Source of the DNA: Euprymna scolopes
Lineage: Eukaryota
Assembly (NCBI GenBank): GCA_053919585.1
Contig: CM132806.1
Direction: 5' to 3' (one strand)
DNA length: 64,000 nucleotides
A program made the translations under genes and the position numbers. Positions 18,913 to 55,810 of the stretch are shown piece by piece; the stretch's first letter is position 1, and the number at the start of each line of letters is the position of its first letter. The notes below the pieces were generated by a model. That model saw only the letters and a list, made by a program, of their open reading frames with translations, was not told where the DNA came from and did no database searches.

Positions 18913-19085
18913 NNNNNNNNNNNNNNNNNNNNNNNNNNNNNNNNNNNNNNNNNNNNNNNNNNNNNNNNNNNNNNNNNNNNNNNNNNNNNNNNNNNNNNNN
19001 NNNNNNNNNNNNNNNNNNNNNNNNNNNNNNNNNNNNNNNNNNNNNNNNNNNNNNNNNNNNNNNNNNNNNNNNNNNNNNNNNNNNN
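18913..19085. other. Assembly gap (N run)
   Basis: Run of n. Confidence 1.
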
Positions 19086-23001: not shown

Positions 23002-26000
23002 TGTTGTGAAGTGAGAACAAAAGAAACGTTTACCTAGAATAAAGGCTTTAATAAACTAATAGAAAATACTAGAGAGCACACAGCAAGGGGAGATAATCAG
23101 ACAACACAGTAAACACAAAATACAAGAGTTTTAATATTATGCCATTCTTTCCCTTCTCAAAAAATTAAAGTTATAGTATTAATTAAAGTTAATTTGTCAC
23201 AGTCATTGATAACGTGATGGTTTTCGACGTTTGCATAAGGATCGTCATAGGGTCCCTGGGCATTCAGATTTAGGAGGGGGTAATAATTCCTCCAAGTCCA
23301 TAGGTACCATGGGGGAAGGTTTATGTTCAGGAAAGGAAAAATCAGCATCAGCATCAGGATCAATGGGCATTGGAGAAGATATTTCAGGTGTTGTATTTTG
23401 TTCTTCGGTGGAAGTTAGATTAGCTAAGTTATTCTCAGCACAAGGATTGTTCGACTTTTCTGGATGAACCAAGGTTTCAGTTGCGGTCAGCTTTTCAGAT
23501 AGACTCAAGTTTCCAATGGGAGCTAGGTCACGTACAGAGACCATAGGCTCTTGTCCGTCATTAAACTGCACGTGGGCGTACTGAGGGTTTGCTTTTAAAA
23601 GTTGCTCCTCATCGACTAAGGGTTCATATTTACTATGGAGAACATGACGAGGTAGTAATACAGGTTCTGGTACAGTTCGCCAAGAGGGTAGAAAATGACC
23701 ACTAAGTGACTTCCGTTGGTTGGAAAATAGTCTCTCATAAGGAGTGGCATTAGTTGCAGTACACAGTAGAGATCTGATTGAGTGTAATACTATGGAAAGT
23801 ACAGTCTCCTACTGTGACTCTTTGAGGTTACTAGAATCCAATGCCATGGATACAGTTTTCCATATAACGTCATTATATCGCTCACATTGTCCATTTCCTC
23901 GAGGGTTGCTATGCCTAAACTTGTGAGATACTCCCGTAGGTCTTTGGATACAAATGAAGTTCCTCGATCAGAGGGGATGTATGAGGGTGTCCCAAACATT
24001 GTAAAAATTTGGAATAAACATTCGATTACTACATAAGTAGTTATATTTGCACAAGCAAAAGCAAATGGAAAACGTGAGCACTCGTCCATTACTACTAGTA
24101 GGTACTGGTTCTTCAATGTAGATGGGAGCGGTCCTTTGAAATCTATGTTGAGTTTTTCCATTGGCTGAGTAGCTTTGATAAGAGGGGTTGAGTTTAGAGA
24201 GTGGAACCTTGGTTTCCATCGTGCACATATGGGGCATTCAGCGCACACTTTCTTGATTTCTTCTATCGAATAAGGAAGATTTCGAACTTTCACAAAATGT
24301 GCCATTCGTGTGATTTCCGGGTGGCAGAGAGACATGTGGATATCTGATAGTTTAGTTTTGTTGTTGATGGCTCCACAATAAGTTTGTGAGAGTGTATCAG
24401 CAGAAATCTTATTTCTTCCTGGCCGATACATGATATCATAATCGTAGCATCCCAATTCCATTCTCCATCTTTGAATTTTATTGTTTTTAATTTTTCCGGG
24501 TCTTTTTGAATTGAACATGTAGTTCACTGCTTCTTGGTCAGTAACTATTATGAAACGCTTAGTAGATAGGTAGTGTGACCACTTTTTGATTGCTTCCACA
24601 ATAGCATATGCTTCTTTTTCCACGGAAGCATGCTTGCATTCAGCATGAGAAAGAGACCTCGAGAAAAAGGCAATTGGTCGACCAGCTTGATTGAGCGGTA
24701 TCTAAGGCATCAGTTTCAATCACTAGGGGAAGATTTTCATTTATTGAATGGAGCAGAGCCTTTCCGATTTCGTCTTTAATGTTATTGAAGGCCTTCTTAG
24801 TTCTATATTGATGGGAAAAGAGTCATTGTTAATAAGAGGTTTTATTTTCTCGGAGAATTTCGATTGCGAATAATATGAAAATAATCCAATGACTCAGCGC
24901 ATAGCAGTGTTGTCTTTCAGAAAAGGTAGTTCCTTGAGTGGTCATAGTCGTTCACCATCTGGTTTAATTGTTCCGTGTGTTATTGTGTAACCAAGGAAAT
25001 CTATTGAGGTAGTTGACAATATAGACTTTGCTTCGTTGAAAGTCAGGTTAAGGACCTGAGCATCTTTCGGAAATTTTGCAAGATTTTCGTCATGCTCCTT
25101 TTGGGTATTCCCGACTATAACTATATTGTCAACATATGCATAAACTCCTTGCAACTTATGTTGCTTGATGATGCTGTCCATTGTTCTTTGGAAACAAGCG
25201 ACACCATTAGTGACGCCAAACAGAACTCTATAAAACATAATTTTCTGTTCACCTCAAAGGCAGTGTAGATTTTCTCTTCCTCTCAAATGGATATTTGATA
25301 CACACTCTTTAAATCCAGGGATCTGTAAATTTTATATCTGAAAATTTCAGCAGCAAGATCGTCCATCCTTGGTAGAGGGCCAGTGTCTAATAATGTGAAT
25401 CTATTGATTGTTCGACTGTAATCAACAACCAATCTTTTTTATGAGACGCTCACCAGTAACTATTAAAACTTGGACTCTTCAAGGTGAGGTACTTTCTTCA
25501 ATTACTCCTTCCCGAAGCATTTTTCAATTTCTGACCGTATAAATTGTGTAGAAAATGTGTAAGGAAAGTCCTTTAAAATTACTGCGCCCTCTGTAGATGT
25601 ATAAGGAAAATCCTTTAAAAGTACTGTGCCCTCTGTAGATGTGTAATGTTGCAGCAACGTAAAGCAATTCAATAACAAGTAAACACCGGTTCTGCACGGA
25701 ATCATACTAGCAAGGTACCTAGATGGACGCGAACGGTTACTCAGAATGGGCCCAACAATTGGTTACTCAGAACGGTCCCAACAACGGTAAGATATGCTCA
25801 CACCCACACGGCACGAGAAGCAACAGCAACACGATTCCCGACCAAGTCAATTATCGCTCTCCCAACGTCTTTCAATCACCCACTTTTATGGCCGTTGCAG
25901 GCCGGCTAAATTTGCATATTGCGAGAATTCATGTGACTTTGCGAGATATCATCCTTTCCAAAGACGGCAGCCGCCATCTTGATCTTTCTTTCTCTATTTT

Positions 26001-27675
26001 CGGTCGGTGACGCCGAGCCGGCCCCGAGGTAAATCTTTCCTTTTCGTCGGTCTCTCTTACGCACCCACACAACACACAAACACACGGGCGCTTGTCTCCT
26101 GGATGCACATTACAAATTGTTCATCTTGATTTCCAAACCTCCTAGATTTAGTGGTAATAGGTTTACAGTCCGGAGAAAGGTTTGCAAAAAGAGATGTTGT
26201 TTCTATTAAAGCAGACTGTACACTGCAGGAAACAGAGCTAGGGATTTGGAGACTTCCCTTATGACCACCAAAGTTAAAAGAACACTAGAATACTGCCTCA
26301 TGAAGTTTTGGTCGAGAATGACATCACTGCAAAGATCCGGTAAAATTTCAAATTTTGTGTTAGCATACCACTCACCTTGTAAATTGATGTTGATGGTACA
26401 CTGTCCTTTCACTGGAGCATTAAGTGATGAGGAGGCCATATGTACCCTTCGAGTAGCTGGTTGTACTTTCAATTTATTTTTCTTAACAAAGTCTTCCGAG
26501 ATGAAGGATCCAGAGCTTTCAGTGTCTATCATAGTTGTTGTTTCAGTTTTTCCGACTAGAATGTATACAGAAGTTGGTTCTAAACTACCCGAAGAAGAAG
26601 CAGATGTATTTTCAAAAAAAAATGTTTTTCTTTGTTAGAGGATCAGACATTATGGACATTAGCTTGTGTGATTGTGTAGATGCTGACGTGGCTTGAAATT
26701 GAATGGAAGCAGATGTAGATTTCTGAGAATTTTGACATGCCCTCGCAAAATGACCTTTAACATGACATTTTTTACAAATGGCGGACCTCACTGGACAAAA
26801 TTTCCGATCGTGTCCAGAATACCCGCAAAAATAGCAAATAGATTTAGTTTTTATGAAAGCAGAAGTATCACAAAATTCATCCTCAGATTTATTATGACAG
26901 TTTGGTTCGTCGTTAACAGTAGCCACCGTGTCATAAGAACCAGTGTAAGATTCAGAATAAGCGTAGGATTCAGAATTTTTCTGTGCGGAATAAATAGCTC
27001 TAGCTTGGTCGATGGTTGTATTTAAAACAAGTGTTCTATTCTCAAGCAATCTCTGCCGGATAGAGTTGGAATGTAAACCAGTAATGAAGGGATCACTGAC
27101 GCAAGCGTCTCTGTTTTCAATAGCATTAACTGCCTGAATTTCACAACCTTTAGCTAACAACAGTAACGATTCTACATATTCATCAATGTTTTCATCGTCT
27201 TTTTGTCTTCGAGTGGACAACATATGTCTAGCAAAAATTTCGTTAGTGGGTTTTATATATAAATCACTGGGACGATTCAGAGCGGAGGCATACGTCGCAT
27301 GTTCTGTGATGTATTTGTATATGTCGGAAGAAACATGATTTATCAAAATGTCTAATCTGTCAATATCAGTTGTGTTCTCGGTGGTTGTTCTTCATATGAG
27401 AGACGATATAGTCCGAAGTCAATGTTTAAATGTTTTGTTTGTGCCGGTTGATCTAAGAGAGATATCCAGACGATTAGGAATTAAAAATTTGTCCATATTT
27501 TTTTTTTTTTTTTTTTTTTGATTAGCTCATTAAATTGTTGTGAAGTGAGAACAAAAGACACGTTTACTAGAATGAAGGCTTTAATGAACTAATAGTAAAT
27601 ACTAAAGAATACAGAGCAAGGGGAGATAATTAGACAACACAGTAAACACAAAATATGAGTTTTAATATTACGACA
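23002..27675 (-). mobile_element. Ty3/Gypsy LTR retrotransposon B (short LTRs, related to A)
   Basis: LTRs at 23002-23144 and 27536-27675; perfect TSD ATATG; PPT at 23145-23160; gag with CCHC knuckles (26612-27346), protease (IDT), RT (YVDN), RNase H/integrase (23790-24623). Confidence 0.95.
25547..26114. mobile_element. Solo LTR nested in the pol gene of Gypsy B
   Basis: TGTA...TACA termini, 5-bp TSD AATTG, internal tandem duplication of about 42 bp; pol sequence resumes on both sides. Confidence 0.85.
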
Positions 27676-28467: not shown

Positions 28468-30776
28468 ATGTCGGAAGGAGACATGAGTGCAATAAACAGA
28501 CCAGTAGCTAGCATAAGACCACCACCACCCCTTTGTATGGAGCAGAATTTGACAGAGAATTGGAAGCTATTTAAGCTGAAATGGCATAATTATACTATTA
28601 TTACGTATCTGACAACCCAGTCGATATAATATCAAACTGCACTTTTGCTTCATACATTAGGAGATGATGCTTTGAAAGTGTACTACGGGTTTCACTTTTC
28701 AACGCCCGAAGATGAAGGAACGCCTATGGAAATTATTCAGGCGTTTGAGAAATATGCTATAGGGGAAACAAATGAAACTTACGAGCGTTATGTTTTTCAC
28801 ACGAGAAAGCAAGGAGAAAAGGAGACCATGGAATCTTTTATTATGGCACTTCGGACATTTGTAAAAACGTGCAATTTTTGTGACAATTGCGTTTCCTCAG
28901 TACTCAGAGATCAAGTCATGCTGGGAATATGTAACCCTCAGACACAAGCTGACTTACTTAAAATAAGACAGCTGGATTTACAAAGATGTATAGACATTTG
29001 TAAGCTGTCTGAAAATGCTACGTTACAAGCCAGTATCCTAAGGCCTGAGAGAGTGAACCGAGTGGAGTTCAGACACAAGAAAAAGCTAGGGAAAAAAACT
29101 GTGAGAGAATGCAGAGCGTGTACACTGCAACATGGACTGAACAAGGAAGTATGTCCTGCATTTGGCAAGACATGCTACAACTGTAATGGAAAAAATCATT
29201 TTTCTGCGAAATGCAGACTAGCAAGGAAAAAGAAGGTGCAGACTGTCAAAACACAACAATATGAGGATCAAGATGACAGTAGTAGTTCTTCAGACTATGG
29301 GCAGGTAGACAGTGTAACAATAAAAGAAAAAGTTAACGCTGTGAATCATGAGGTGATAAAAACGGAAATGATGGTGAAAGGAAAGCCAATTATTTTTCAG
29401 CTTGACAGTGGAGCATCAGTAAACATACTGAATGAGAAGCATGTAATGGGGAAAACACTGGAGCCTTCAAATAAGACACTGGTCATGTGGAATGGGACAG
29501 AAGTGAAGCCATTGGGAGAGTGTCGAGTCAAAATGATAAACCCCAAAACTGCACAAAAATATGCAGTTAAGTTTGTCATTGTAAAAGAGCATTTCCATCC
29601 TTTACTGGGAGCAAATGCAATTCAGAAGATGGCACTCATCAAAATCAACCAGGACCAGTTCAAAATGATAGCCAAAATTTCTCAAGTGGATGAATCCAGC
29701 AGCCAGAACTCTGACAGCATTATAAACGAGTTCAGAGATGTATTTAAGGAGGAATTGGGTCAGTTACCTGGAGCGGTACATTTGGAGGTGGATACAGCAG
29801 TAACAACAAATGTAGCTGCAGCACGAAGAGTGCCAGTCGCACTGAAAGACAAATTAAAAGTTGAATTGGAGAAACTGGTTAAAAAGAAAGTTATTGAACC
29901 AGTAAGTGAGCCAACTCCATGGGTAATTGCATTGGGATTGGTGATGAAGAAAAATGGAAATCTAAGGATTTGCATAGACCCAAGACCACTAGATAAGGCT
30001 TTGAAAAGGGAATATTTCCAACTACCTACATTGGATAATTTGCTGCCAGAACTGGCTGACAGCAAAGTATTTTCCACCCTGGATTTACGAGATGGATTTT
30101 GGCATTTGAAATTGGATGAAGTCAGCAGTCGTTTGACTACATTTACCACGCCATTTGGTCAGTTCGGTGGAAGGTTTTACCATTTGGGATTACTCCAGCT
30201 CCAGAGATATTTCAAAAGGCCCTCTTTAACAATGTATGGGATTTAGAGGGTATGATCAACAAAGCAGATGATCTTCTGGTGATTAGGAAAGGTAAAACAA
30301 TGGAGGAAGCAACAGCTGATCATGACAAAAAACTGAGAAAACTGTTGCAGAGATGTAACACTAGGAAAGATATAGATGTTTGTCGTAGGTTCAATTTTCC
30401 AGCATTCAATTGAACCTACGACAAACATCTATATCTTTCCTAGTGTTACACGAATGACCCGGTCTAAGCCGGGTTGACATGCTAGTATATATATGTGTAT
30501 AGGTGTATATACATATATGTATGTTCATGAATTAAAATGTGGCACGCGTCTGCGGATGAAATGTCAGAAATTTACAAGCTAAACGGGAATTGCTTCAATA
30601 TTTCTCACAAATATAAACAGACCTTGTTATTGTTATAAAAAATGTAACAGAAAGGAATCTGGTTACGTGGATGTTTTGAAAAGATTGACAGGAAAAATTC
30701 ACAGAAGGAAAAAGATTGCAGTTGGAGATTTGATTGTCAACCAAGTAGACGCCACGATAATTCTCTCTGTCGCTCT

Positions 30777-30824
<48 letters not shown>

Positions 30825-32929
30825 CTCTATCTACCATAAGTAAGCACAACAGGAGAAATAAAAAACGGACTGTTGCTTACACCAATGGTTGTTGTGTTTT
30901 GAATTCTTAGAAAAAGGGTTTATAATATAACACTAGGTCACACGATAACCAGTGATGGGTTACTTCCTGACCCTGGGAAGGTAAAAGCTATAAAATAGAT
31001 GCCATGCCCAACAGATGTTAAAGGCATGCAAAGATTGGCTGGATTTGTGAACTACTTGACAAAGTTTCTGCCACATATTTCCGACGTGATGGCCCCAATT
31101 CGGAATTTAGTGAAGGCAGATGTGCCATGGACATGGTCCCAAATTCATGAAAGAGCTTTTGAAAAAATTAAAAGGTTAGTGAATGAGGCACCAGTATTGA
31201 GATACTATGAACCCAACAAACCTTTGGGCATTCAATGTGATGCAAGTAAGAAGGGTATGGGGGCTGCACTACTGCAGGAAGGTCAACCTCTAGCCTATAT
31301 CAGCCGTGCGCTGACTGACACAGAAACCTGATATGCGCAAATTGAAAAAGAACTGCTAGCAGTAATCTATGCTACCGAACAGTTTCATCAATATACGTTT
31401 GGTCGACAGATAGCGGTACTGACCGATCATAGGCCATTAGAAGCTATCATGAAAAAAGAGTTGGGAAAATGCCCCAAACGACTGCAAAACATGCTGATGT
31501 GATTACAGGCTTACGATGCTACCGTTTTGTACCATCCAGGTAGGAAAATGTTCATTGCAGACACGCTATCAAGAGCATATATCCACGGAGTGAACAGCGA
31601 AGATATGGACAATGAAGATGATGTCAAAGAAGCTGAATACATTCCTGTAACAGAGAGGAGGCTGCTTGAACTAAGCTCAGCCACAAAAGAAGACTGAAGC
31701 ATGCAGCAGTTGCAGCAAGTAATTGTGGAGGGATGGCCAGACGAAAAATACATCTTGACCCAGAGGTGAGACCGTTTTTTGGTATACAAAATGAAATGAC
31801 TGTACAAGATGGGTTAATTTTCAGGGGTAATCGTGTAGTGGTTCCAATTACCCAGCGGGCTATACTGAAGGAGAAGCTGCATTCTACACACCTAGGAATA
31901 GAAGGATGTTGCAGAAGGGCAAGAGAATGTTTGTATTGGCCAAACATGAACAGTGAGATTAGAGACTATGTTTCAAAATGCCCCACATGCACAAAATATG
32001 AAGTAGCCAATCCAGCCGAACCATTAATGGCTCATGAAGTTCCTAACAGACCCTGGGCGAAAGTGGGAGTGGACCTGTTTAAGTTTACAGATAGAGACTA
32101 TCTTTGTACTGTGGAGTGCATGAGCAACTTCTGGGAAATTGATCATCTTCAAAATACAGAAGCTAAGACAGTAGTAACCAAACTGAAACATCATTTTGCA
32201 CGACATGGAATACCAGATCAGGTGGTAACTGATAATGGGCCTCAGTTTAGCAACCAGGAATTTTCCACCTTTGCTAAAAAGTGGTGTTTTATACATACAC
32301 TTGTCAGTCCATACAATAGCAAGGCGAATGGGAAAGTGGAATCTGCAGTAAAAATGGCAAAGAACCTTTTCCGGAAAGCGATGGAGGATAAGGTTGATCC
32401 ATACCTAGCAATGTTGGATCATAGGAATACACCATCTAAGGGTCTCTTATCACCAGCTCAGAAGCTGATGTCAAGGAGAACAAAAACACTTCTCCCAACT
32501 AGAGAGGAGTTACTCAGACCAGAATTGGCCAAAAACCTCAAAAAGTGTGTCAAACGAGACAGCAGGAGACAAGAACAGTTTTTTAACCACAAAGTGCAAC
32601 TACTTCAACCGTTACACCCTGGAGATGTAGTATGGATTAAACCCCACATAAAGGGTCAGAGAGAGTGGAAGAAGGCAATTGTATGGGAGAGACTGGATGA
32701 GCGGTCATACAATGTAAAATTGAATGGGGAGCTATATCAACGGAATAGGGTCGACTTGGAAAAAACTGCAGAAGCACCCCCACTTACATCGTTGATTCAC
32801 CAGCTATGTGGAGTGCAGAGCGAAATAGTCAGGAATGAAGGTAATGGCATAGAAGAGAGAGATGACATCGGCCAACCTGGGTATGAAGGTGAATTGGGAG
32901 AGGGAGTTAACCCGACACCACCCCAATGA
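28468..32929 (+). pseudogene. Gag-Pol polyprotein of Gypsy C, disrupted by frameshifts, stops and an insertion
   Basis: CYNCNGKNHFSAKC knuckle, LDSGA protease, LDLRDGFW RT, CDAS RNase H, integrase HHCC plus VTDNGPQF..NGKVE. Confidence 0.92.
30354..30937. mobile_element. Non-coding insertion in the Gypsy C RT, with a perfect 43-bp hairpin and a Helitron-like 3' end
   Basis: Arms at 30354-30396 and 30408-30450; ACCCGG-n6-CCGGGT plus CTAG at 30457-30485; TAACACTAGG repeated at both ends. Confidence 0.7.
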
Positions 32930-44900: not shown

Positions 44901-45177
44901 TGTGCACTATCGATGCAGGTATGTTGGGTGGTTCTACTTTGGCTTTTACTTTACTGTGCCAGCATTGTCATACTCTTGTCAGTTAGTTGACTAGTACTGC
45001 TATTAGACTATAGTCTTTAACTATGTCTACAAATGTGTTGAGTCCTCTTCATAGCAGCATTTTGCTGGCTGCCTTCATGGTTGGTTGGTACTTTCCTACA
45101 TATAGTACCTTTGCCTGCCACTGACATGTCAGGTTAACTCCTTTTAACACTTTGCTAGGTTAAAGTTTGGCACATTA

Positions 45178-45201
45178 CACAGTGGGTTCGCAAGCGGACA
45201 T
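45178..45201 (+). repeat. Left RSS-like TIR: heptamer + 6 bp + CAAGCGGACAT
   Basis: CACAGTG-GGTTCG-CAAGCGGACAT, read directly. Confidence 0.9.
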
Positions 45202-45936
45202 ATGGAATTTTTGCAACTTCCCCAAATGACTATAAAACTTAGAAAAGTGCAAAGTTCAGTTTCTGTAGTATCAAAAAATGGTATTATTTATCTTCTAAAA
45301 ATGATTATTGATCAAGATATGCCAGCTGGAAGCTTGCGAATTTTGATCGTTCACAACCTTGCGATAACATAAAAATTACCAAGCAGCAACTTTGGGTGTA
45401 CCTGAGTAATTGTCAAAAATTTCTTCCAAAACCTCTGTACATGTCCCATAAGTCCCCGAAATATAAGGCCAGATGTCTAAAATTGAATTAAATGCGAAAA
45501 GTTGGATCTATGGTCAGCTATTGGGCCTCTTTTGTGGGATTTTCCGGAAAATTTATGACACAGATTAACAGTTTTTTCCTTAAAAAAAGCCCGAAATTTG
45601 ACCCCGATCTGTACACTTTCACCGACGATTGCAAAAAAAAGCCCGAGATAAAAAAATTTATGCTTCACATATAAGAATCTAGACAAATAACACTATCATA
45701 ATCCAATTGGACAAAAAAATTCATTCTCGGGCACCATATTAATTCTGACGTAATAAAAAATATTGAGGATACCCAATTATTGTAATTTTGTGTATCCAGC
45801 AAAAATCGTCAAACGCGTATATTCATATAACTAATCAAATTTTTTTCCACATATATGACCCATACCACTTTTCCTATGTTTTTGGGGTGTAGAATCCAAA
45901 TCTGGCCTTTAAAACACCTGAAACTTAACTGTTTTC

Positions 45937-47214
45937 ATGATAAATCCAAATTCTAGCACATCATATGGTGAATTGGTATGGGAGAATCCTTCGCATGCAT
46001 CTTCCTCGTCTTGTCGCCCCGTGATGCTACTGATGGGAAACGAAAACAGAGAGAACCTTGATATCGTTACAGACATCCAGAAAGAGAGAAAGGATTGTGA
46101 ATTCATTGTCCAACATCACAGCAAACCGGTGAATATCAAGGTCGATGCAACTATGTCTATGATTGATGGTAAGATGCATAGTCTTATATCTGGTTTGGGT
46201 GGGGCATTTTGTTGCTTGTGTGCATACAGTAAAGAACAATGTCATGATTCTGTCTGTATCACCACTGGTTTCAAAATTGATCGTTCCTTGGAACAAACAC
46301 TAGCCCTCTGTGAGAAAGGAATCCATCTTCCAGAAAACCGAAAGGTTGGTGATTATGATGATCGCAAAGGTATCACCCAGGATCCTATTACCATCGAAGA
46401 TATCAACAACTTGCATCCTCTCCATAATTTGCTGAGATGCTTTGGATGGATCTTCAAGATTTGTTATCATGTCACTGCAGGACATTATTCATGGTCAGAA
46501 GCAAAGGTGGACGTATCCAACCGTATCGCTAGAGCATTGGCATTTCTAAAACAAGCGAAGGAACAGATCCAGACCAAGGTAAAGGAAGAGACATCAATCA
46601 CCATGGAGAAACCTGATCCAACAGGTCACGGGGGTACGTCTACGACAGGAAATGTGGCGTCACTTATGCTCAATACTAGCAACAGAAGGTTGTTGACTGA
46701 TGGAATTGATAACACCGAATTGAAGTTAAAGATTGACCGCATTATACTTCGTATGGCGGTTATTCTAACGATAAACAACTCGAACAAGAACATCAGGGTT
46801 GCTGAATTTCAGGAGTTTTGCCGTGAAACATACCTTCTTGTCAATAAGATATCGTGGATTCAAATCAGTCCAAGTGCACACGTTGTTCTTGGTCACAGTG
46901 CGGAACTTATTGAACAGAACGACGGCAAAGGTTTGCTGAACTTTACGGAGTGTGGCATCGAAGCAAATAACAAATTCCTGAGGCAGTATCGAATGAACTA
47001 TGCACGGAAAACAAGTCAATTTGACAATTTATCCGATTGTATTAACAGACTGTGGGATAAAAGCGACCCTATGGTGTTGAAAGTATGTGAACGACTACAG
47101 TGCACTCATTGTAAAGGAGCAGGTCACACAATACGAAGCTGTGATGAGTTGAAGGAAGCACTTCATCAATGCAACAGCGAATATGAAGCACTAGTTGCCT
47201 TCTTGTCTTACTGA
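45937..47214 (+). CDS. RAG1-like/Transib transposase, C-terminal catalytic core plus CTT-like tail (first catalytic Asp region absent)
   Basis: WENP..SSSSCRP, MIDGK (D77), CCLC, PLH, GGTSTTGNVA, HVVLGH, TECGIEANNK (E342), ARKTS..NLSD, SDP, CTHCKGAGHTIRSC; 425 codons without a stop. Confidence 0.9.
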   Translation: MINPNSSTSYGELVWENPSHASSSSCRPVMLLMGNENRENLDIVTDIQKERKDCEFIVQHHSKPVNIKVDATMSMIDGKMHSLISGLGGAFCCLCAYSKEQCHDSVCITTGFKIDRSLEQTLALCEKGIHLPENRKVGDYDDRKGITQDPITIEDINNLHPLHNLLRCFGWIFKICYHVTAGHYSWSEAKVDVSNRIARALAFLKQAKEQIQTKVKEETSITMEKPDPTGHGGTSTTGNVASLMLNTSNRRLLTDGIDNTELKLKIDRIILRMAVILTINNSNKNIRVAEFQEFCRETYLLVNKISWIQISPSAHVVLGHSAELIEQNDGKGLLNFTECGIEANNKFLRQYRMNYARKTSQFDNLSDCINRLWDKSDPMVLKVCERLQCTHCKGAGHTIRSCDELKEALHQCNSEYEALVAFLSY

Positions 47215-47349
47215 TTCTTTTTATTTAGGGTCTATTTTGTTCCAAGTTACGTTATTGATCATTCTATTCATAGTTCATTATGTTTTTCAATATTGAATTA
47301 CAGTGCGTATCGAATTGTTATTACATAGCTGCGGATTTATTACGAACTT

Positions 47350-47895
47350 TCTTGCAAATTCTGTTCAAAAACGCATTCTTAGGCCTTTTACGTCGAAAAA
47401 CCTGTTTCCCGGAATGTTGACCCGATTTCTCAAAATTAGGGGTTGAGGCACCCAGACTCCCAAAAATTTGAAAATTATACATGTAAAATTGACTTCTCTA
47501 CATTCCACGCCATTGTACGGTTCTAACAAGCCCAAAATGGCCTCCGTATCAGTATTATTTAACAAGTTCTGTCAAAAAACGTGTTTTTTGGATTTTGGCC
47601 AGATCGCCCAAAATCAGGGGTTTTGGCCCCTTTGACCCCCCAAAATTTCAAAAATTTTAGAGAAATGTTTTTTTCTGTCTTCTACTCCCTCATTCGGTTC
47701 TAACAAACCCTAAATGGCCCCTACATCGATATTATTTGACGAGTTCTGTCAAGAAACTCGTTTTTTTGGATTTTGGCCAGATTGCCTAAAATCCAGGCTT
47801 TCGGCCCCCTTGACCCCCCAAAATTTCAAAAATTTTTGGGAAATGTTTTTTCCTGTCCTCTACTTCCTCATAAGGTTCTAAAAAGCCCTTATGGC
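47350..47895. repeat. About 178-bp subterminal tandem repeat (about 3 copies) in the right arm of the transposon
   Basis: GGTTCTAA(C/A)AA recurs at about 47519, 47696 and 47874; units share TTCTGTCAA..GGATTTTGGCCAGAT..GACCCCCCAAA. Confidence 0.85.
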
Positions 47896-47930
47896 TATAA
47901 ATGAAGTAGTTTTTTCTAATTTATAGTTAA

Positions 47931-47966
47931 ATGTCCGCTTGACCCCCCCCCTCTGGGCCCACTGTG
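47931..47966 (-). repeat. Right RSS-like TIR: heptamer + 18 bp + CAAGCGGACAT
   Basis: Reverse complement reads CACAGTG-GGCCCAGAGGGGGGGGGT-CAAGCGGACAT. Confidence 0.9.
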
Positions 47967-48789
47967 CATTATTCACTGAGTGCAACCAGCTTGCATCCTG
48001 ATCCGTCGACCTCTAGCGTGATCTCAATGGACAGTGAACCTGCTTCCACCCAAAGTGTAAAATCCCTACCATTTACATACTAATCACTTTGTAAAAGATT
48101 GTCCTGATGTATTCCATTCAATATTTCCTTCACCATAATCCTGAGTTGTTATTTCATCATCCCTGCCAGTTGTAACTTTGTTGGCGTAATGTTTCATGTA
48201 TACTGTAACTACTCAATGCCTTCTGCAAACTGGAAAATGACCAGTCTTCCACATACTGGAAAGATTGTTTGCCACATCATGACTGATAGAGATTTTGAAC
48301 TATCTCCCCCCCCCCCGTATCTATTACAGTCTACTGCCGTCGCTGTGAATGTGCAATCCAAACATTTGTGTTCCTTCTTGAAACTACTCGGGTAAACTCA
48401 CAGGTCAGTCAAAATTTTCCCAAATATTTCTTCACTTGTTCTGCAAATGTGAGACATTAATTGTCGAAAATGATGTCCATGTATGATGATGTGGCTGGTT
48501 GAATTGACATATAGTGGAAGTTTACTAAGTTTATAATGGATTCCATTATCAATGCAACTTTCATGCTAAGTTGTGTGAGGCAATACCTTTGCCTCTCAAT
48601 ATCACTGTCTGAAAGGGACACAATGATTTGTATGTATGCACTTTAAGATAAGATTTCTCCAATTCAATATGACAGCACCTGAGTCTTCATGGCACCAGTC
48701 CTGCAACTTCTGTGCATATATACACCAGCATTTACTGGAAAAGCGCCAACAAAGTTATTGAGCTCTCTGTAGTCTGTCACAAATCACAC

Positions 48790-52066: not shown

Positions 52067-52199
52067 NNNNNNNNNNNNNNNNNNNNNNNNNNNNNNNNNN
52101 NNNNNNNNNNNNNNNNNNNNNNNNNNNNNNNNNNNNNNNNNNNNNNNNNNNNNNNNNNNNNNNNNNNNNNNNNNNNNNNNNNNNNNNNNNNNNNNNNNN
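52067..52199. other. Assembly gap (N run)
   Basis: Run of n. Confidence 1.
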
Positions 52200-55288: not shown

Positions 55289-55810
55289 ATGGAAACGCAT
55301 ATAAAACAGAAGTCGTATTCTTGTAATGTGTGTGATCATTCTTTTTCTTATAAATCAAATTTAGTCAGACATATGCGAACTCACAGTGGTGAAAAGCCAT
55401 ATTCTTGTAATGTATGTGACTATTCTTTTTCTCGTGAATCACATTTAGTCAGACATATTAAAACACATACTGGAGAGAAGCCATATCCTTGTAACGTGTG
55501 TGATTATTCTTGTTCTCGCAAATCAAGTTTAGTTATACATATGCGAAAACACTCTGGCGAAAAGCCATATTCTTGTAACGTTTGTGATTATTCGTTTTCT
55601 TATAAATCAAGTTTAATCACCCATATTCAAACACACACTGGAGAGAAGCCATATTCTTGTGAAATATGTGAATATTCTTGCTCTCTTAAATCAAGTTTAG
55701 TTGTACATATGCGAACACACAGTGGTGAAAAGCCATATTCTTGTAATGTGTGTGATTATTCTTGTGCTTCTAATTCAAGGATAGCAAGACATATGCGAAT
55801 ACACAGGTGA
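55289..55810 (+). CDS. Tandem C2H2 zinc-finger protein, six intact fingers (may be a terminal exon or a pseudogene)
   Basis: Six CxxC-x12-HxxxH units with H(T/S)GEKPY linkers; a possible splice acceptor lies upstream at about 54812. Confidence 0.85.
   Translation: METHIKQKSYSCNVCDHSFSYKSNLVRHMRTHSGEKPYSCNVCDYSFSRESHLVRHIKTHTGEKPYPCNVCDYSCSRKSSLVIHMRKHSGEKPYSCNVCDYSFSYKSSLITHIQTHTGEKPYSCEICEYSCSLKSSLVVHMRTHSGEKPYSCNVCDYSCASNSRIARHMRIHR

What the first reader, a model, noticed from the sequence alone, without database searches (positions are those of the whole stretch)
45178..47966. Asymmetric bipartite ends: heptamer + 6 bp versus 18 bp + identical 11-mer, a 12/23-like architecture
Seen in sequence: left CACAGTG-6-CAAGCGGACAT (45178-45201) and right CACAGTG-18-CAAGCGGACAT (47966-47931). 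The spacers are unrelated after GG and differ by 12 bp, or by 11 if the C9 homopolymer is off by one, i.e. about one helical turn as in 12/23 RSS. A third AT-rich block, ACTATAAA(AC)TTAGAAAA, starts 51 bp in on the left (45229) and 39 bp in on the right (47927), a 12-bp offset in the opposite direction; this could be chance. Inference: the transposase may require one short and one long end, an independent or ancestral spacer rule.
Basis: partly seen in the sequence, partly recalled or inferred. Interest (0 to 1): 0.88.

Follow-up and report, generated by a model that had tools for sequence, protein, structure and literature searches.

The report
Deleted Transib transposon, asymmetric RSS-like ends
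This is a broken copy of a Transib "jumping gene" (the transposon family from which the antibody-gene recombinase RAG1 arose); its two ends carry the same signals at spacings about one DNA turn apart, a real and family-wide feature, but one already described for this transposon group.

Summary
Window 45178-47966 is a 2,789-bp Transib (RAG1-like DDE) DNA transposon with a 5-bp target-site duplication, CATTA. Both ends carry CACAGTG and the 11-mer CAAGCGGACAT, 6 bp apart at the 5' end and 18 bp apart at the 3' end. The copy is non-autonomous. A deletion of about 1.7 kb removed the first ~290 residues of a ~707-aa transposase, including the NBD-like region and the first catalytic Asp.

In relatives from marine metagenomes and bdelloid rotifers (89% down to 26% protein identity), the 5' spacer is 6 bp in 8 of 9 other ends. 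The 3' spacer is 16 bp in nine ends and 17 bp in the rotifer lineage, where its sequence is unrelated. Only the window copy has 18, because of a G9 run. The family asymmetry is therefore 10-11 bp, about one helical turn, always short at the 5' end and long at the 3' end. Indels are rare in the spacers.

The third AT-rich block is not supported. Asymmetric 12/23-like TIRs are already published for Transib (Kapitonov & Jurka 2005; Tao 2022) and for RAG-like transposons. This is a new member of a known kind. A functional short/long requirement is plausible but untested.

The parts
45173..45177 (.). Target-site duplication, left copy (CATTA)
   Evidence: Read; identical to 47967-47971. A 5-bp TSD is the Transib/RAG hallmark.
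45178..45184 (+). 5' TIR heptamer CACAGTG. Together with the next GG(C) it forms a terminal 9-10-mer that is invariant in all relatives.
   Evidence: alignment A2 has columns 1-9 invariant.
45185..45190 (+). 5' short spacer, 6 bp (GGTTCG)
   Evidence: It is 6 bp in 8 of 9 other 5' ends, with varying sequence (GGCTCC, GGCTGG, GGCTCG, GGCAAC).
45191..45201 (+). 5' copy of the conserved 11-mer CAAGCGGACAT, the presumed internal transposase-binding element
   Evidence: Ten of its 11 positions are invariant or nearly invariant across relatives.
45202..45947 (+). 5' subterminal and non-coding region of the element, retained
   Evidence: 45177-45298 aligns to L001 516-637. 45268-45947 aligns to L006 144-822 at 72% identity.
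45948..45957 (.). Junction of an internal deletion of about 1.7 kb. It removed the rest of the 5' region and transposase residues 1 to ~290.
   Evidence: 5'-region homology ends at 45947. Coding homology to L001 resumes at 45958, which is L001 2887, about residue 290 of P0002.
45937..47214 (+). 425-aa ORF, the C-terminal ~60% of a Transib/RAG1-like transposase. It keeps the second catalytic Asp (MIDGK, 46159-46173), the catalytic Glu region (GIEANNK, 46954-46974) and a C-terminal CX2CX4HX4C zinc knuckle (47101-47142). It lacks the NBD-like region and the first catalytic Asp.
   Evidence: HzTransib 6pqn E=1.8e-17 and BbRAG1L 6b40 E=2.7e-6. 88-89% identical to the 707-709-aa proteins P0001 and P0002. 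D259, D359 and E620 are invariant columns in A1. Motif coordinates.
47516..47889 (.). 178-bp subterminal tandem repeat, 2.1 copies, in the 3' non-coding region
   Evidence: Two of the units carry GGGGGTCAAG/A, resembling the junction of spacer and 11-mer. This is not seen in L001, L009 or L030.
47931..47941 (-). 3' copy of the 11-mer CAAGCGGACAT
47942..47959 (-). 3' long spacer, 18 bp here (GGCCCAGAGGGGGGGGGT, with a G9 run). It is 16 bp in nine relatives and 17 bp in the rotifer lineage.
47960..47966 (-). 3' TIR heptamer CACAGTG
47967..47971 (.). Target-site duplication, right copy (CATTA)
45229..45246 (+). It is not supported as part of the inverted repeat.
   Evidence: 66 of 1000 shuffles reach the score, and relatives show nothing comparable. 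Within 5' ends alone, an AYTATGAAA motif is conserved near offset 50, but it is displaced by about 8 bp in L009 and L022.
47912..47927 (-).
   Evidence: Conserved only among the closest 3' ends (window, L001, L005).

Best explanation
Window 45178-47966 is an internally deleted, non-autonomous copy of a Transib DNA transposon. Transib elements are RAG1-like DDE cut-and-paste transposons with no RAG2-like gene. This copy sits between 5-bp target-site duplications.

Its ends are bipartite, RSS-like terminal inverted repeats. Each has a terminal CACAGTG+GGC cleavage element and an internal 11-mer, CAAGCGGACAT. The two elements are 6 bp apart at the 5' end. At the 3' end they are 16 bp apart in the family, 17 bp in rotifers, and 18 bp in this copy through expansion of a G run.

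Shown:
- the anatomy of the ends;
- conservation of both spacer lengths and of their polarity across lineages down to 26% protein identity;
- the scarcity of indels in the spacers compared with the neighbouring subterminal DNA;
- the presence in the full-length transposase of an N-terminal region that aligns with the RAG1 nonamer-binding domain, and of a C-terminal CCHC zinc knuckle.

Inferred:
- The 10-11-bp difference keeps the 11-mer on the same face of the helix at both ends, but one turn further out at the 3' end.
- The transposase dimer therefore assembles an intrinsically asymmetric synaptic complex with one short and one long end. The core and zinc knuckle would sit on the terminal ~12 bp, and a flexibly tethered NBD-like domain would sit on the 11-mers. 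This is analogous to RAG on a 12/23 RSS pair and to ProtoRAG on its 5'/3' TIRs.

This copy could move only if a full-length family member supplied transposase in trans.
For: Identity:
- ORF matches HzTransib (E=1.8e-17) and BbRAG1L.
- Full-length relatives of 707-711 aa carry PF26100 RAG1_RNase_H.
- The AlphaFold model of P0002 (pLDDT 82) matches mouse RAG1 core at E=7e-24, and HzTransib at TM 0.83 normalised to the target.
- 5-bp TSDs: window CATTA, L009 CCCTA, L030 TAGTA, L013 AGGTT.
- L001 has a single large ORF and no RAG2-like gene.

Deletion. D259 is an invariant column and lies in the missing part.

Asymmetry:
- 5' spacer is 6 bp in the window, L001/L002, L006/L016, L007, L009, L022, L027 and L018.
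- 3' spacer is 16 bp in L001, L005, L009, L014, L017, L026, L029, L030 and L033; 17 bp in L018/L028; 18 bp in the window.
- L018 is a rotifer-type element, 26% identical to P0002. It has the same heptamer and 11-mer but an unrelated long spacer, GGCAATTTTGGCTAGAG.
- A more distant family, L013 (34% identity), has different TIRs but again about 9-10 extra bp in the 3' end.

Domains:
- The family profile aligns to RAG1 from the NBD motif [20 protein letters not shown], and to BbRAG1L from its NBD*.
- The CX2CX4HX4C knuckle is read directly, with a weak match to retroviral nucleocapsid knuckles.

Precedent:
- ProtoRAG works better on the asymmetric 5'/3' TIR pair than on symmetric pairs (PMC8289069).
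- The RAG1 NBD dimer enforces the 12/23 rule (summarised in PMC10462144).
Against: - No functional data exist for this family. Conservation of length is also what simple descent from one ancestor with a 10-bp indel would give.
- Within the marine clade the long spacer is conserved in sequence too.
- Length is not absolutely fixed: 16, 17 and 18 bp at the 3' end, and a decayed copy (L030) has a 4-bp loss at the 5' spacer.
- The relatives were partly found by searching for the exact heptamer and 11-mer, so family members with other end structures would have been missed.
- The 11-mer is GC-rich and lies about 6 bp closer to the heptamer than an RSS nonamer. Which domain binds it is a guess. In BbRAG1L the NBD* is reported to be auxiliary and non-specific (PMC8289069, PMC7204232).
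- Elements assembled from short-read metagenomes (L001, L018) lack matching TSDs, so their two ends may come from different copies.
Confidence: 0.6

Rival explanations
1. The asymmetry is a historical accident with no functional requirement. A ~10-bp insertion in the 3' TIR, or a deletion in the 5' TIR, arose in an ancestor and has simply been inherited. The transposase needs only the terminal ~12-17 bp, as proposed for invertebrate RAGL elements, and tolerates any position of the 11-mer.
For: - Within the marine clade the long spacer keeps a recognisable sequence, GGCYnAgAnnGGGGKT, as expected from descent.
- Lengths of 16, 17 and 18 bp all occur.
- Martin et al. 2020 argue that invertebrate RAGL enzymes rely mainly on the terminal 15-17 bp plus the CTT* domain and are relatively insensitive to TIR asymmetry (PMC7204232). 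This family has such a C-terminal zinc knuckle.
Against: - The 11-mer is as conserved as the heptamer across lineages only 26% identical in protein, so it is under selection and its position probably matters.
- In the rotifer lineage the long spacer has been replaced in sequence but kept within 1 bp in length.
- The 6-bp spacer varies in sequence but not in length.
- Indels are frequent just inside the 11-mer (8-bp and 3-bp gaps in A2, many in A3) but nearly absent in the spacers.
Confidence: 0.28
2. The extra ~10 bp at the 3' end is not a spacer but an additional binding site, for example for a host factor or a second transposase domain. It would mark the 3' end functionally, as the distinct left and right ends of P elements or Tn7 do.
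For: Positions A13, A15 and G21-G23 and the T before the 11-mer are nearly invariant in the marine-clade 3' ends. A G-rich tract is always present there.
Against: The rotifer-lineage element L018/L028 has no G tract and an unrelated sequence at the same place and length. The G run varies from interrupted forms (GGAGGGG, CAAGGGG, CAGGGGG) up to G9.
Confidence: 0.1
3. The pattern is chance or an assembly artefact.
For: The heptamer-gap-11-mer pattern also hits unrelated bacterial sequences at roughly the expected rate in very large collections (L015, L019-L021, L023-L025, L031, L032, L034, L035). The exact length of the G9 run could be a homopolymer sequencing error.
Against: In the window the two matches are inverted. 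They bracket a Transib transposase remnant and abut a perfect 5-bp TSD, with none expected in shuffles. The same architecture recurs in independent assemblies.
Confidence: 0.02

Closest known systems
Transib transposons with RSS12/RSS23-like 5' and 3' TIRs (Transib5 of Drosophila, Transib2_AG and TransibN1-N3_AG of Anopheles; Kapitonov & Jurka 2005, PMC1131882)
   Same: RAG1-core-like DDE transposase, 5-bp TSD and a CACA(A/G)TG terminal heptamer. The 5' TIR has the short spacer and the 3' TIR the long one, with a difference of about one helical turn.
   Different: Those ends have an A-rich nonamer-like element at 12 and 23 bp. Here the internal element is a GC-containing 11-mer, CAAGCGGACAT, at 6 and 16(-18) bp. 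The hosts here are marine animals and bdelloid rotifers rather than insects.
Subgroup I Transib, and the AanRAGL element of Aureococcus (Tao et al. 2022, PMC9435367)
   Same: Subgroup I Transibs are reported to all have asymmetric TIRs, a CTT1 C-terminal domain and the alpha11-alpha12 region. This family has asymmetric TIRs, a C-terminal CCHC knuckle and about 40 profile positions that HzTransib lacks but RAG1 and BbRAG1L have. AanRAGL has two conserved elements separated by 4/13 bp, a geometry very close to the 6/16 seen here.
   Different: Phylogenetic placement in Subgroup I was not tested here. AanRAGL also carries a RAG2-like gene, whereas this family has a single ORF.
ProtoRAG (BbRAGL-B) and PflRAGL-A transposons (PMC8289069, PMC10462144)
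   Same: Bipartite TIRs with a rigid spacer length. ProtoRAG has an experimentally shown preference for the asymmetric 5'/3' pair. The organisation heptamer, short conserved adjacent block, asymmetric spacer, distal element matches. PflRAGL-A has a 10-bp asymmetry. Both have NBD/NBD* and CCGHC C-terminal tails.
   Different: Those elements encode RAG2L. The ProtoRAG asymmetry is 27/31, only 4 bp. Their conserved block next to the heptamer (TR2) is A-rich and 9-10 bp long, whereas here it is GGCNN.
Vertebrate 12/23 recombination signal sequences
   Same: The heptamer CACAGTG is identical to the RSS consensus. There are two signal classes differing by about one helical turn, and the recombinase is homologous.
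   Different: There is no ACAAAAACC nonamer and the spacers are 6/16 rather than 12/23. There is no RAG2, and this is a mobile element rather than a domesticated system.
HzTransib (Helicoverpa zea; PDB 6pqn and related entries)
   Same: Closest solved structure by sequence (E=1.8e-17 for the window ORF, 7.7e-72 for the family profile).
   Different: HzTransib TIRs are described as symmetric (PMC8289069). The solved construct aligns only from family-profile position 158, so it has no NBD-like part, and it has a different C-terminal tail.

Membership tests
Transib superfamily of DNA transposons | Transposase homologous to the RAG1 core, with a DDE triad | tested here: met
   Met for the family. 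Window ORF against HzTransib E=1.8e-17. Model of P0002 against RAG1 E=7e-24. D259, D359 and E620 are invariant and E624 nearly invariant. The window copy itself lacks the first Asp through deletion, so it is a non-autonomous member.
Transib superfamily of DNA transposons | 5-bp target-site duplication | tested here: met
   CATTA in the window, CCCTA in L009 and AGGTT in L013, TAGTA in L030. Not met on the short-read metagenome contigs L001 and L018, which may be chimeric assemblies.
Transib superfamily of DNA transposons | TIRs beginning with an RSS-like CACA(A/G)TG heptamer | tested here: met
   CACAGTG at both ends. L009 has CACAATG at its 3' end.
Transib superfamily of DNA transposons | No RAG2-like gene inside the element (distinguishes Transib from RAGL) | tested here: met
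   The full-length elements L001 (4,539 bp) and L009 (3,953 bp) hold one large ORF only.
Subgroup I Transib (Tao et al. 2022) | Asymmetric 5'/3' TIRs | tested here: met
   6 versus 16-18 bp.
Subgroup I Transib (Tao et al. 2022) | CTT1-type C-terminal tail (CCHC/CCGHC zinc knuckle) | tested here: met
   CTHCKGAGHTIRSC at window 47101-47142. P0002 residues 667-686 weakly match retroviral nucleocapsid knuckles. Equivalence to CTT1 is inferred from the motif only.
Subgroup I Transib (Tao et al. 2022) | Retention of the alpha11-alpha12 region of the ZnB domain | tested here: inconclusive
   Family-profile positions 397-449 are matched continuously by BbRAG1L and RAG1, but correspond to only about 13 residues in HzTransib. 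This is consistent, but the helices were not mapped one to one.
Subgroup I Transib (Tao et al. 2022) | Phylogenetic placement with Subgroup I sequences | not tested
12/23 recombination signal sequences | Heptamer CACAGTG at the cleavage site | tested here: met
12/23 recombination signal sequences | A-rich nonamer (ACAAAAACC-like) as the second element | tested here: not met
   The second conserved element is CAAGCGGACAT. The AT-rich block further in is not a conserved inverted repeat.
12/23 recombination signal sequences | Spacers of 12±1 and 23±1 bp | tested here: not met
   6 and 16-18 bp. Only the difference of about one helical turn is shared.
12/23 recombination signal sequences | Efficient reaction only between one short and one long signal (the 12/23 rule) | not testable with these tools
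   Needs cleavage or transposition assays.
RAG-like (RAGL) transposons such as ProtoRAG | Convergent RAG1L and RAG2L gene pair between the TIRs | tested here: not met
   No second ORF of 100 aa or more in L001, and none among the called genes inside the L009 element.

The most novel reading that the evidence does not exclude
In a Transib family without RAG2, a strict short/long rule (6/16-17, one helical turn) is enforced by an NBD-like N-terminal domain reading a GC-rich 11-mer. If so, coupled asymmetric synapsis, the mechanistic core of the 12/23 rule, predates both capture of RAG2 and the A-rich nonamer. This family, with intact 707-aa ORFs recovered identically from several ocean samples, would be a compact and probably active system in which to test that.
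Probability: 0.3. Interest if true: 0.55.

Novelty: new member of a known kind. Interest (0 to 1): 0.33.

Why it matters
The origin of the 12/23 rule is a standing question in the evolution of V(D)J recombination. Published work already holds that asymmetric, bipartite TIRs are ancestral to Transib and RAG-like transposons.

This family adds comparative support. The same heptamer and 11-mer, and the same 6 versus 16-17 bp spacing, persist between transposases that are only 26% identical, living in marine animals and in bdelloid rotifers, while the long spacer changes sequence. That is the pattern expected of a length-constrained spacer.

The family also offers a small single-protein system, with an NBD-like domain and a CCHC tail, in which the requirement for asymmetry could be measured directly. 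It does not change the current picture. The specific copy in the window is a dead-end deletion derivative.

Tried and rejected
1. Third AT-rich block as a third TIR element. Rejected: in the window 66 of 1000 shuffles reach its score, and there is no 5'/3' similarity beyond the 11-mer in four other complete elements. In 5' ends its distance from the 11-mer shifts by about 8 bp in L009 and L022.

2. GGGGGTCAAG copies in the 178-bp repeats as subterminal transposase sites. These occur only in the window copy, not in L001, L009 or L030.

3. Other copies or fragments in the window. None found by blastn or tblastn.

4. Pfam on the ORF and on P0002. This Pfam copy gave no RAG1 family hit at the thresholds used, although the precomputed tables list PF26100. 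Identity therefore rests on the PDB sequence and fold matches.

5. A third independent lineage (Rotaria P0072). The contig starts at the gene, and no 11-mer-like 3' end was found. Uninformative.

6. Mnemiopsis element L012. The ends could not be paired or supported by a TSD. Left unresolved.

7. Pattern scans of prokaryotic genomes and viral contigs. These gave only chance hits, plus one eukaryotic contaminant contig, L033.

8. The Liu et al. 2019 HzTransib structure paper could not be read. Statements on HzTransib TIR symmetry come from PMC8289069.

Full report
**1. Observation**

The pattern CACAGTG, a gap of 4-30 bp, then CAAGCGGACAT occurs exactly twice in the 64-kb window. The two matches are in inverted orientation, at 45178-45201 (6-bp gap) and 47966-47931 (18-bp gap). 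None of 100 dinucleotide-preserving shuffles gave a match. The 11-mer itself occurs nowhere else in the window, even with one mismatch allowed. Directly outside the two heptamers lies the same pentamer, CATTA (45173-45177 and 47967-47971). This is a 5-bp target-site duplication, so these are the ends of one inserted element of 2,789 bp.

**2. What the element is**

- The only long ORF inside is 45937-47214 (+), 425 aa. It matches the Helicoverpa zea Transib transposase (PDB 6pqn, E=1.8e-17), amphioxus RAG1L (6b40, E=2.7e-6) and, weakly, mouse RAG1.
- A search of 5.8 billion proteins found full-length relatives of 707-711 aa, up to 89% identical, carrying the RAG1 RNase-H family PF26100. Almost all come from marine (including TARA Oceans) metagenome assemblies.
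- An AlphaFold model of the 707-aa relative P0002 (mean pLDDT 82) matches the mouse RAG1 core at E=7e-24. It also matches HzTransib (TM 0.83 normalised to the target) and BbRAG1L.
- In an 18-sequence alignment, D259, D359 and E620 are invariant and E624 is nearly invariant.
- Full-length elements hold no second gene. This is therefore a Transib element, not a RAG1L/RAG2L (RAGL) element.

**3. The window copy is defective**

- Its first ~120 bp align to the 5' end of the full-length element L001.
- Window 45268-45947 aligns to the 5' non-coding region of L006 at 72% identity.
- Coding homology resumes only at 45958, about residue 290 of P0002.
- A deletion of about 1.7 kb thus removed the N-terminal ~290 residues, including the first catalytic Asp.
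- The remaining 415 homologous codons differ from L001 at 41 synonymous and 42 non-synonymous codons. Most of that divergence therefore accrued under purifying selection before the deletion.
- No other copy or fragment lies in the window.

**4. Are the asymmetric ends copy-specific?**

No. I read the ends of relatives obtained in two ways. The first was through their proteins. The second was a scan of JGI metagenome contigs and prokaryotic genome contigs for the heptamer and 11-mer with a free gap of 3-22 bp.

5' ends (the side of the transposase start):

| Locus | Spacer length | Spacer sequence |
|---|---|---|
| window | 6 | GGTTCG |
| L001/L002, L007, L027 | 6 | GGCTCC |
| L006/L016, L022 | 6 | GGCTGG |
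| L009 | 6 | GGCTCG |
| L018 | 6 | GGCAAC |
| L030 (pseudogenised copy) | 2 | 4-bp loss at this point |

3' ends:

| Locus | Spacer length | Spacer sequence |
|---|---|---|
| L001 | 16 | GGCTCAGAGGGGGGGT |
| L005 | 16 | GGCTCAGAGGAGGGGT |
| L014 | 16 | GGCTCAGAAGGGGGGT |
| L017 | 16 | GGCTTAGAAGGGGGGT |
| L029 | 16 | GGCTTAAACAGGGGGT |
| L009 | 16 | GGCCCAGACAGGGGGT |
| L030 | 16 | GGCTGAGACAAGGGGT |
| L033 | 16 | GGCTGAAACAGGGGGT |
| L026 | 16 | GGCCCACATTGGGGTT |
| L018/L028 | 17 | GGCAATTTTGGCTAGAG |
| window | 18 | GGCCCAGAGGGGGGGGGT |

- Complete elements with both ends and a matching TSD are the window (CATTA), L009 (CCCTA) and L030 (TAGTA).
- The polarity is always the same: short spacer at the 5' end, long at the 3' end.
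- L018 carries a 733-aa Transib ORF only 26% identical to P0002. Its close relatives are annotated in the bdelloid rotifers Didymodactylos carnosus and Rotaria.
- The same terminal CACAGTGGGC, the same 11-mer and nearly the same spacer lengths therefore persist across very distant transposases and hosts, while the long-spacer sequence has been replaced.
- Among the same sequences, indels are common just inside the 11-mer: an 8-bp insertion in L009 and L022, a 3-bp gap in L018 and many gaps in the 3' alignment. They are almost absent in the spacers.
- A further family, L013 (34% identity, TSD AGGTT), has different TIR sequences but again about 9-10 extra bp in the 3' end.

**5.

- The family asymmetry is 10 bp, or 11 bp in rotifers. 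The 12 bp in the window comes from a G9 run where relatives have five to seven G or an interrupted run. This is a homopolymer expansion or a sequencing error, which I cannot check.
- The first five spacer bases match or nearly match between the two ends of one element (GGCTC/GGCTC in L001, GGCAA/GGCAA in L018). The architecture is better written as terminal 12-mer, then 1 versus 11-12 bp, then the 11-mer. This is the same heptamer, adjacent block, asymmetric spacer, distal element scheme described for PflRAGL-A (PMC10462144).
- The third AT-rich block is not supported. In the window, 66 of 1000 shuffles of the two subterminal regions reach its score. In L001, L009, L030 and L018 the 5' and 3' subterminal regions share nothing above chance.

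**6. How it probably works**

- The family profile aligns to RAG1 starting at the nonamer-binding domain. The family consensus kskkPlsevgrrqkrrrL aligns opposite [20 protein letters not shown]. The profile also aligns to BbRAG1L from its NBD*.
- In line with this, the structure model's best PDB matches are RAG1 chains that include the NBD, with about 640 aligned columns against about 570 for chains without it.
- The C-terminus carries a CX2CX4HX4C zinc knuckle (window 47101-47142). This motif forms the CTT* clamp on the heptamer-adjacent DNA in BbRAG1L (PMC10462144, PMC8289069).
- I infer that the catalytic core and the knuckle hold the terminal ~12 bp of both ends in the same way. A tethered NBD-like domain pair would bind the two 11-mers. 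A difference of 10-11 bp keeps the 11-mers in the same helical phase but about one turn further out at the 3' end, so the synaptic complex would be built asymmetrically.
- The inference rests on analogy with RAG, where the NBD dimer pivots to fit 12/23, and with ProtoRAG, where the asymmetric 5'/3' pair is experimentally preferred (PMC8289069). It is not shown here.
- The main rival is that the indel is merely inherited and tolerated. I give that about 0.28. A specific 3'-end binding site within the long spacer gets about 0.1. It is disfavoured by the rotifer lineage.

**7. Comparison with what is known**

- Kapitonov and Jurka (2005, PMC1131882) showed that several Transib families have 5' and 3' TIRs resembling RSS12 and RSS23. 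They stated that the 12/23 rule can be derived from Transib TIR structure.
- Tao et al. (2022, PMC9435367) report that all Subgroup I Transibs have asymmetric TIRs, the CTT1 domain and an NBD equivalent. They also report that AanRAGL has two conserved elements separated by 4/13 bp.
- Martin et al. (2023, PMC10462144) describe a 10-bp asymmetry in PflRAGL-A and conclude that asymmetric TIRs, CTT-CCGHC and NBD-GRPR/K are probably ancestral.
- ProtoRAG has 27/31 spacers (PMC8289069).
- The present family fits this picture and looks like a Subgroup I-type Transib. Phylogenetic placement was not tested.
- It is not a 12/23 RSS in the strict sense. It has no A-rich nonamer, and its spacers are 6/16.

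**8. Verdict**

It is a new member of an already described class. This particular copy is a deletion derivative whose 18-bp spacer is atypical. Interest is moderate to low for a specialist. The useful residue is comparative evidence for spacer-length constraint in a RAG2-less Transib, and a compact candidate system for testing it.

Noticed in passing
window 23790-24623 (-), 26612-27346 (-), 28645-30246 (+), 31733-32929 (+): ORFs with retroviral-type integrase, RNase H, reverse transcriptase, aspartic protease and CCHC gag domains. These are fragments of one or more LTR retrotransposons, so the region is rich in transposable elements.
   Followed up: partly
window 55289-55810 (+): A 173-aa ORF made of about six tandem C2H2 zinc fingers. 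It lies in a markedly AT-rich stretch, 27-28% GC at 52-60 kb against 35-39% elsewhere.
   Followed up: no
window 18913-19085 and 52067-52199: Two runs of N, which are assembly gaps or masked stretches.
   Followed up: no
window 47516-47889: A 178-bp tandem repeat (2.1 copies, 84% match) sits in the 3' non-coding part of the element. Two units contain GGGGGTCAAG/A, which resembles the spacer/11-mer junction of the 3' TIR. The motif copies are absent from L001, L009 and L030.
   Followed up: partly
L033 (JAAEPJ010000191.1, 621 bp): A contig filed under a 'MAG: bacterium isolate Cli_8' is a 3' end of this eukaryotic Transib family, with a 16-bp spacer and 38% GC. It is probably eukaryotic contamination of the bin.
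   Followed up: partly
L001 517-5055 and L018 107-4444: These complete-looking elements on short-read metagenome contigs have no matching 5-bp TSD (CGCAA/GCGAC; GCTCC/CGGTA). Elements on long contigs do have one. The likely cause is chimeric assembly across multiple copies. L001 and L002 share the same 5' flank.
   Followed up: no
L012 3818-3824 and 4305-4311 (Mnemiopsis leidyi CM108485.1): Two Transib-type termini, CACAGTGTATGTTCG, face away from each other about 480 bp apart, upstream of a 733-aa Transib gene. The gene lies inside a kinesin gene. The ends could not be paired and no TSD was found.
   Followed up: no
L013 2161-3723 (-): A THAP / P-element-like transposase ORF (PF05485, PF21787) lies next to the distant Transib element.
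   Followed up: no
window 45937-47214: The truncated 425-aa ORF is still open. It retains the C-terminal DNA-binding parts but not the first catalytic Asp. It could in principle encode an inactive, competing protein. That is pure speculation and was not tested.
   Followed up: no
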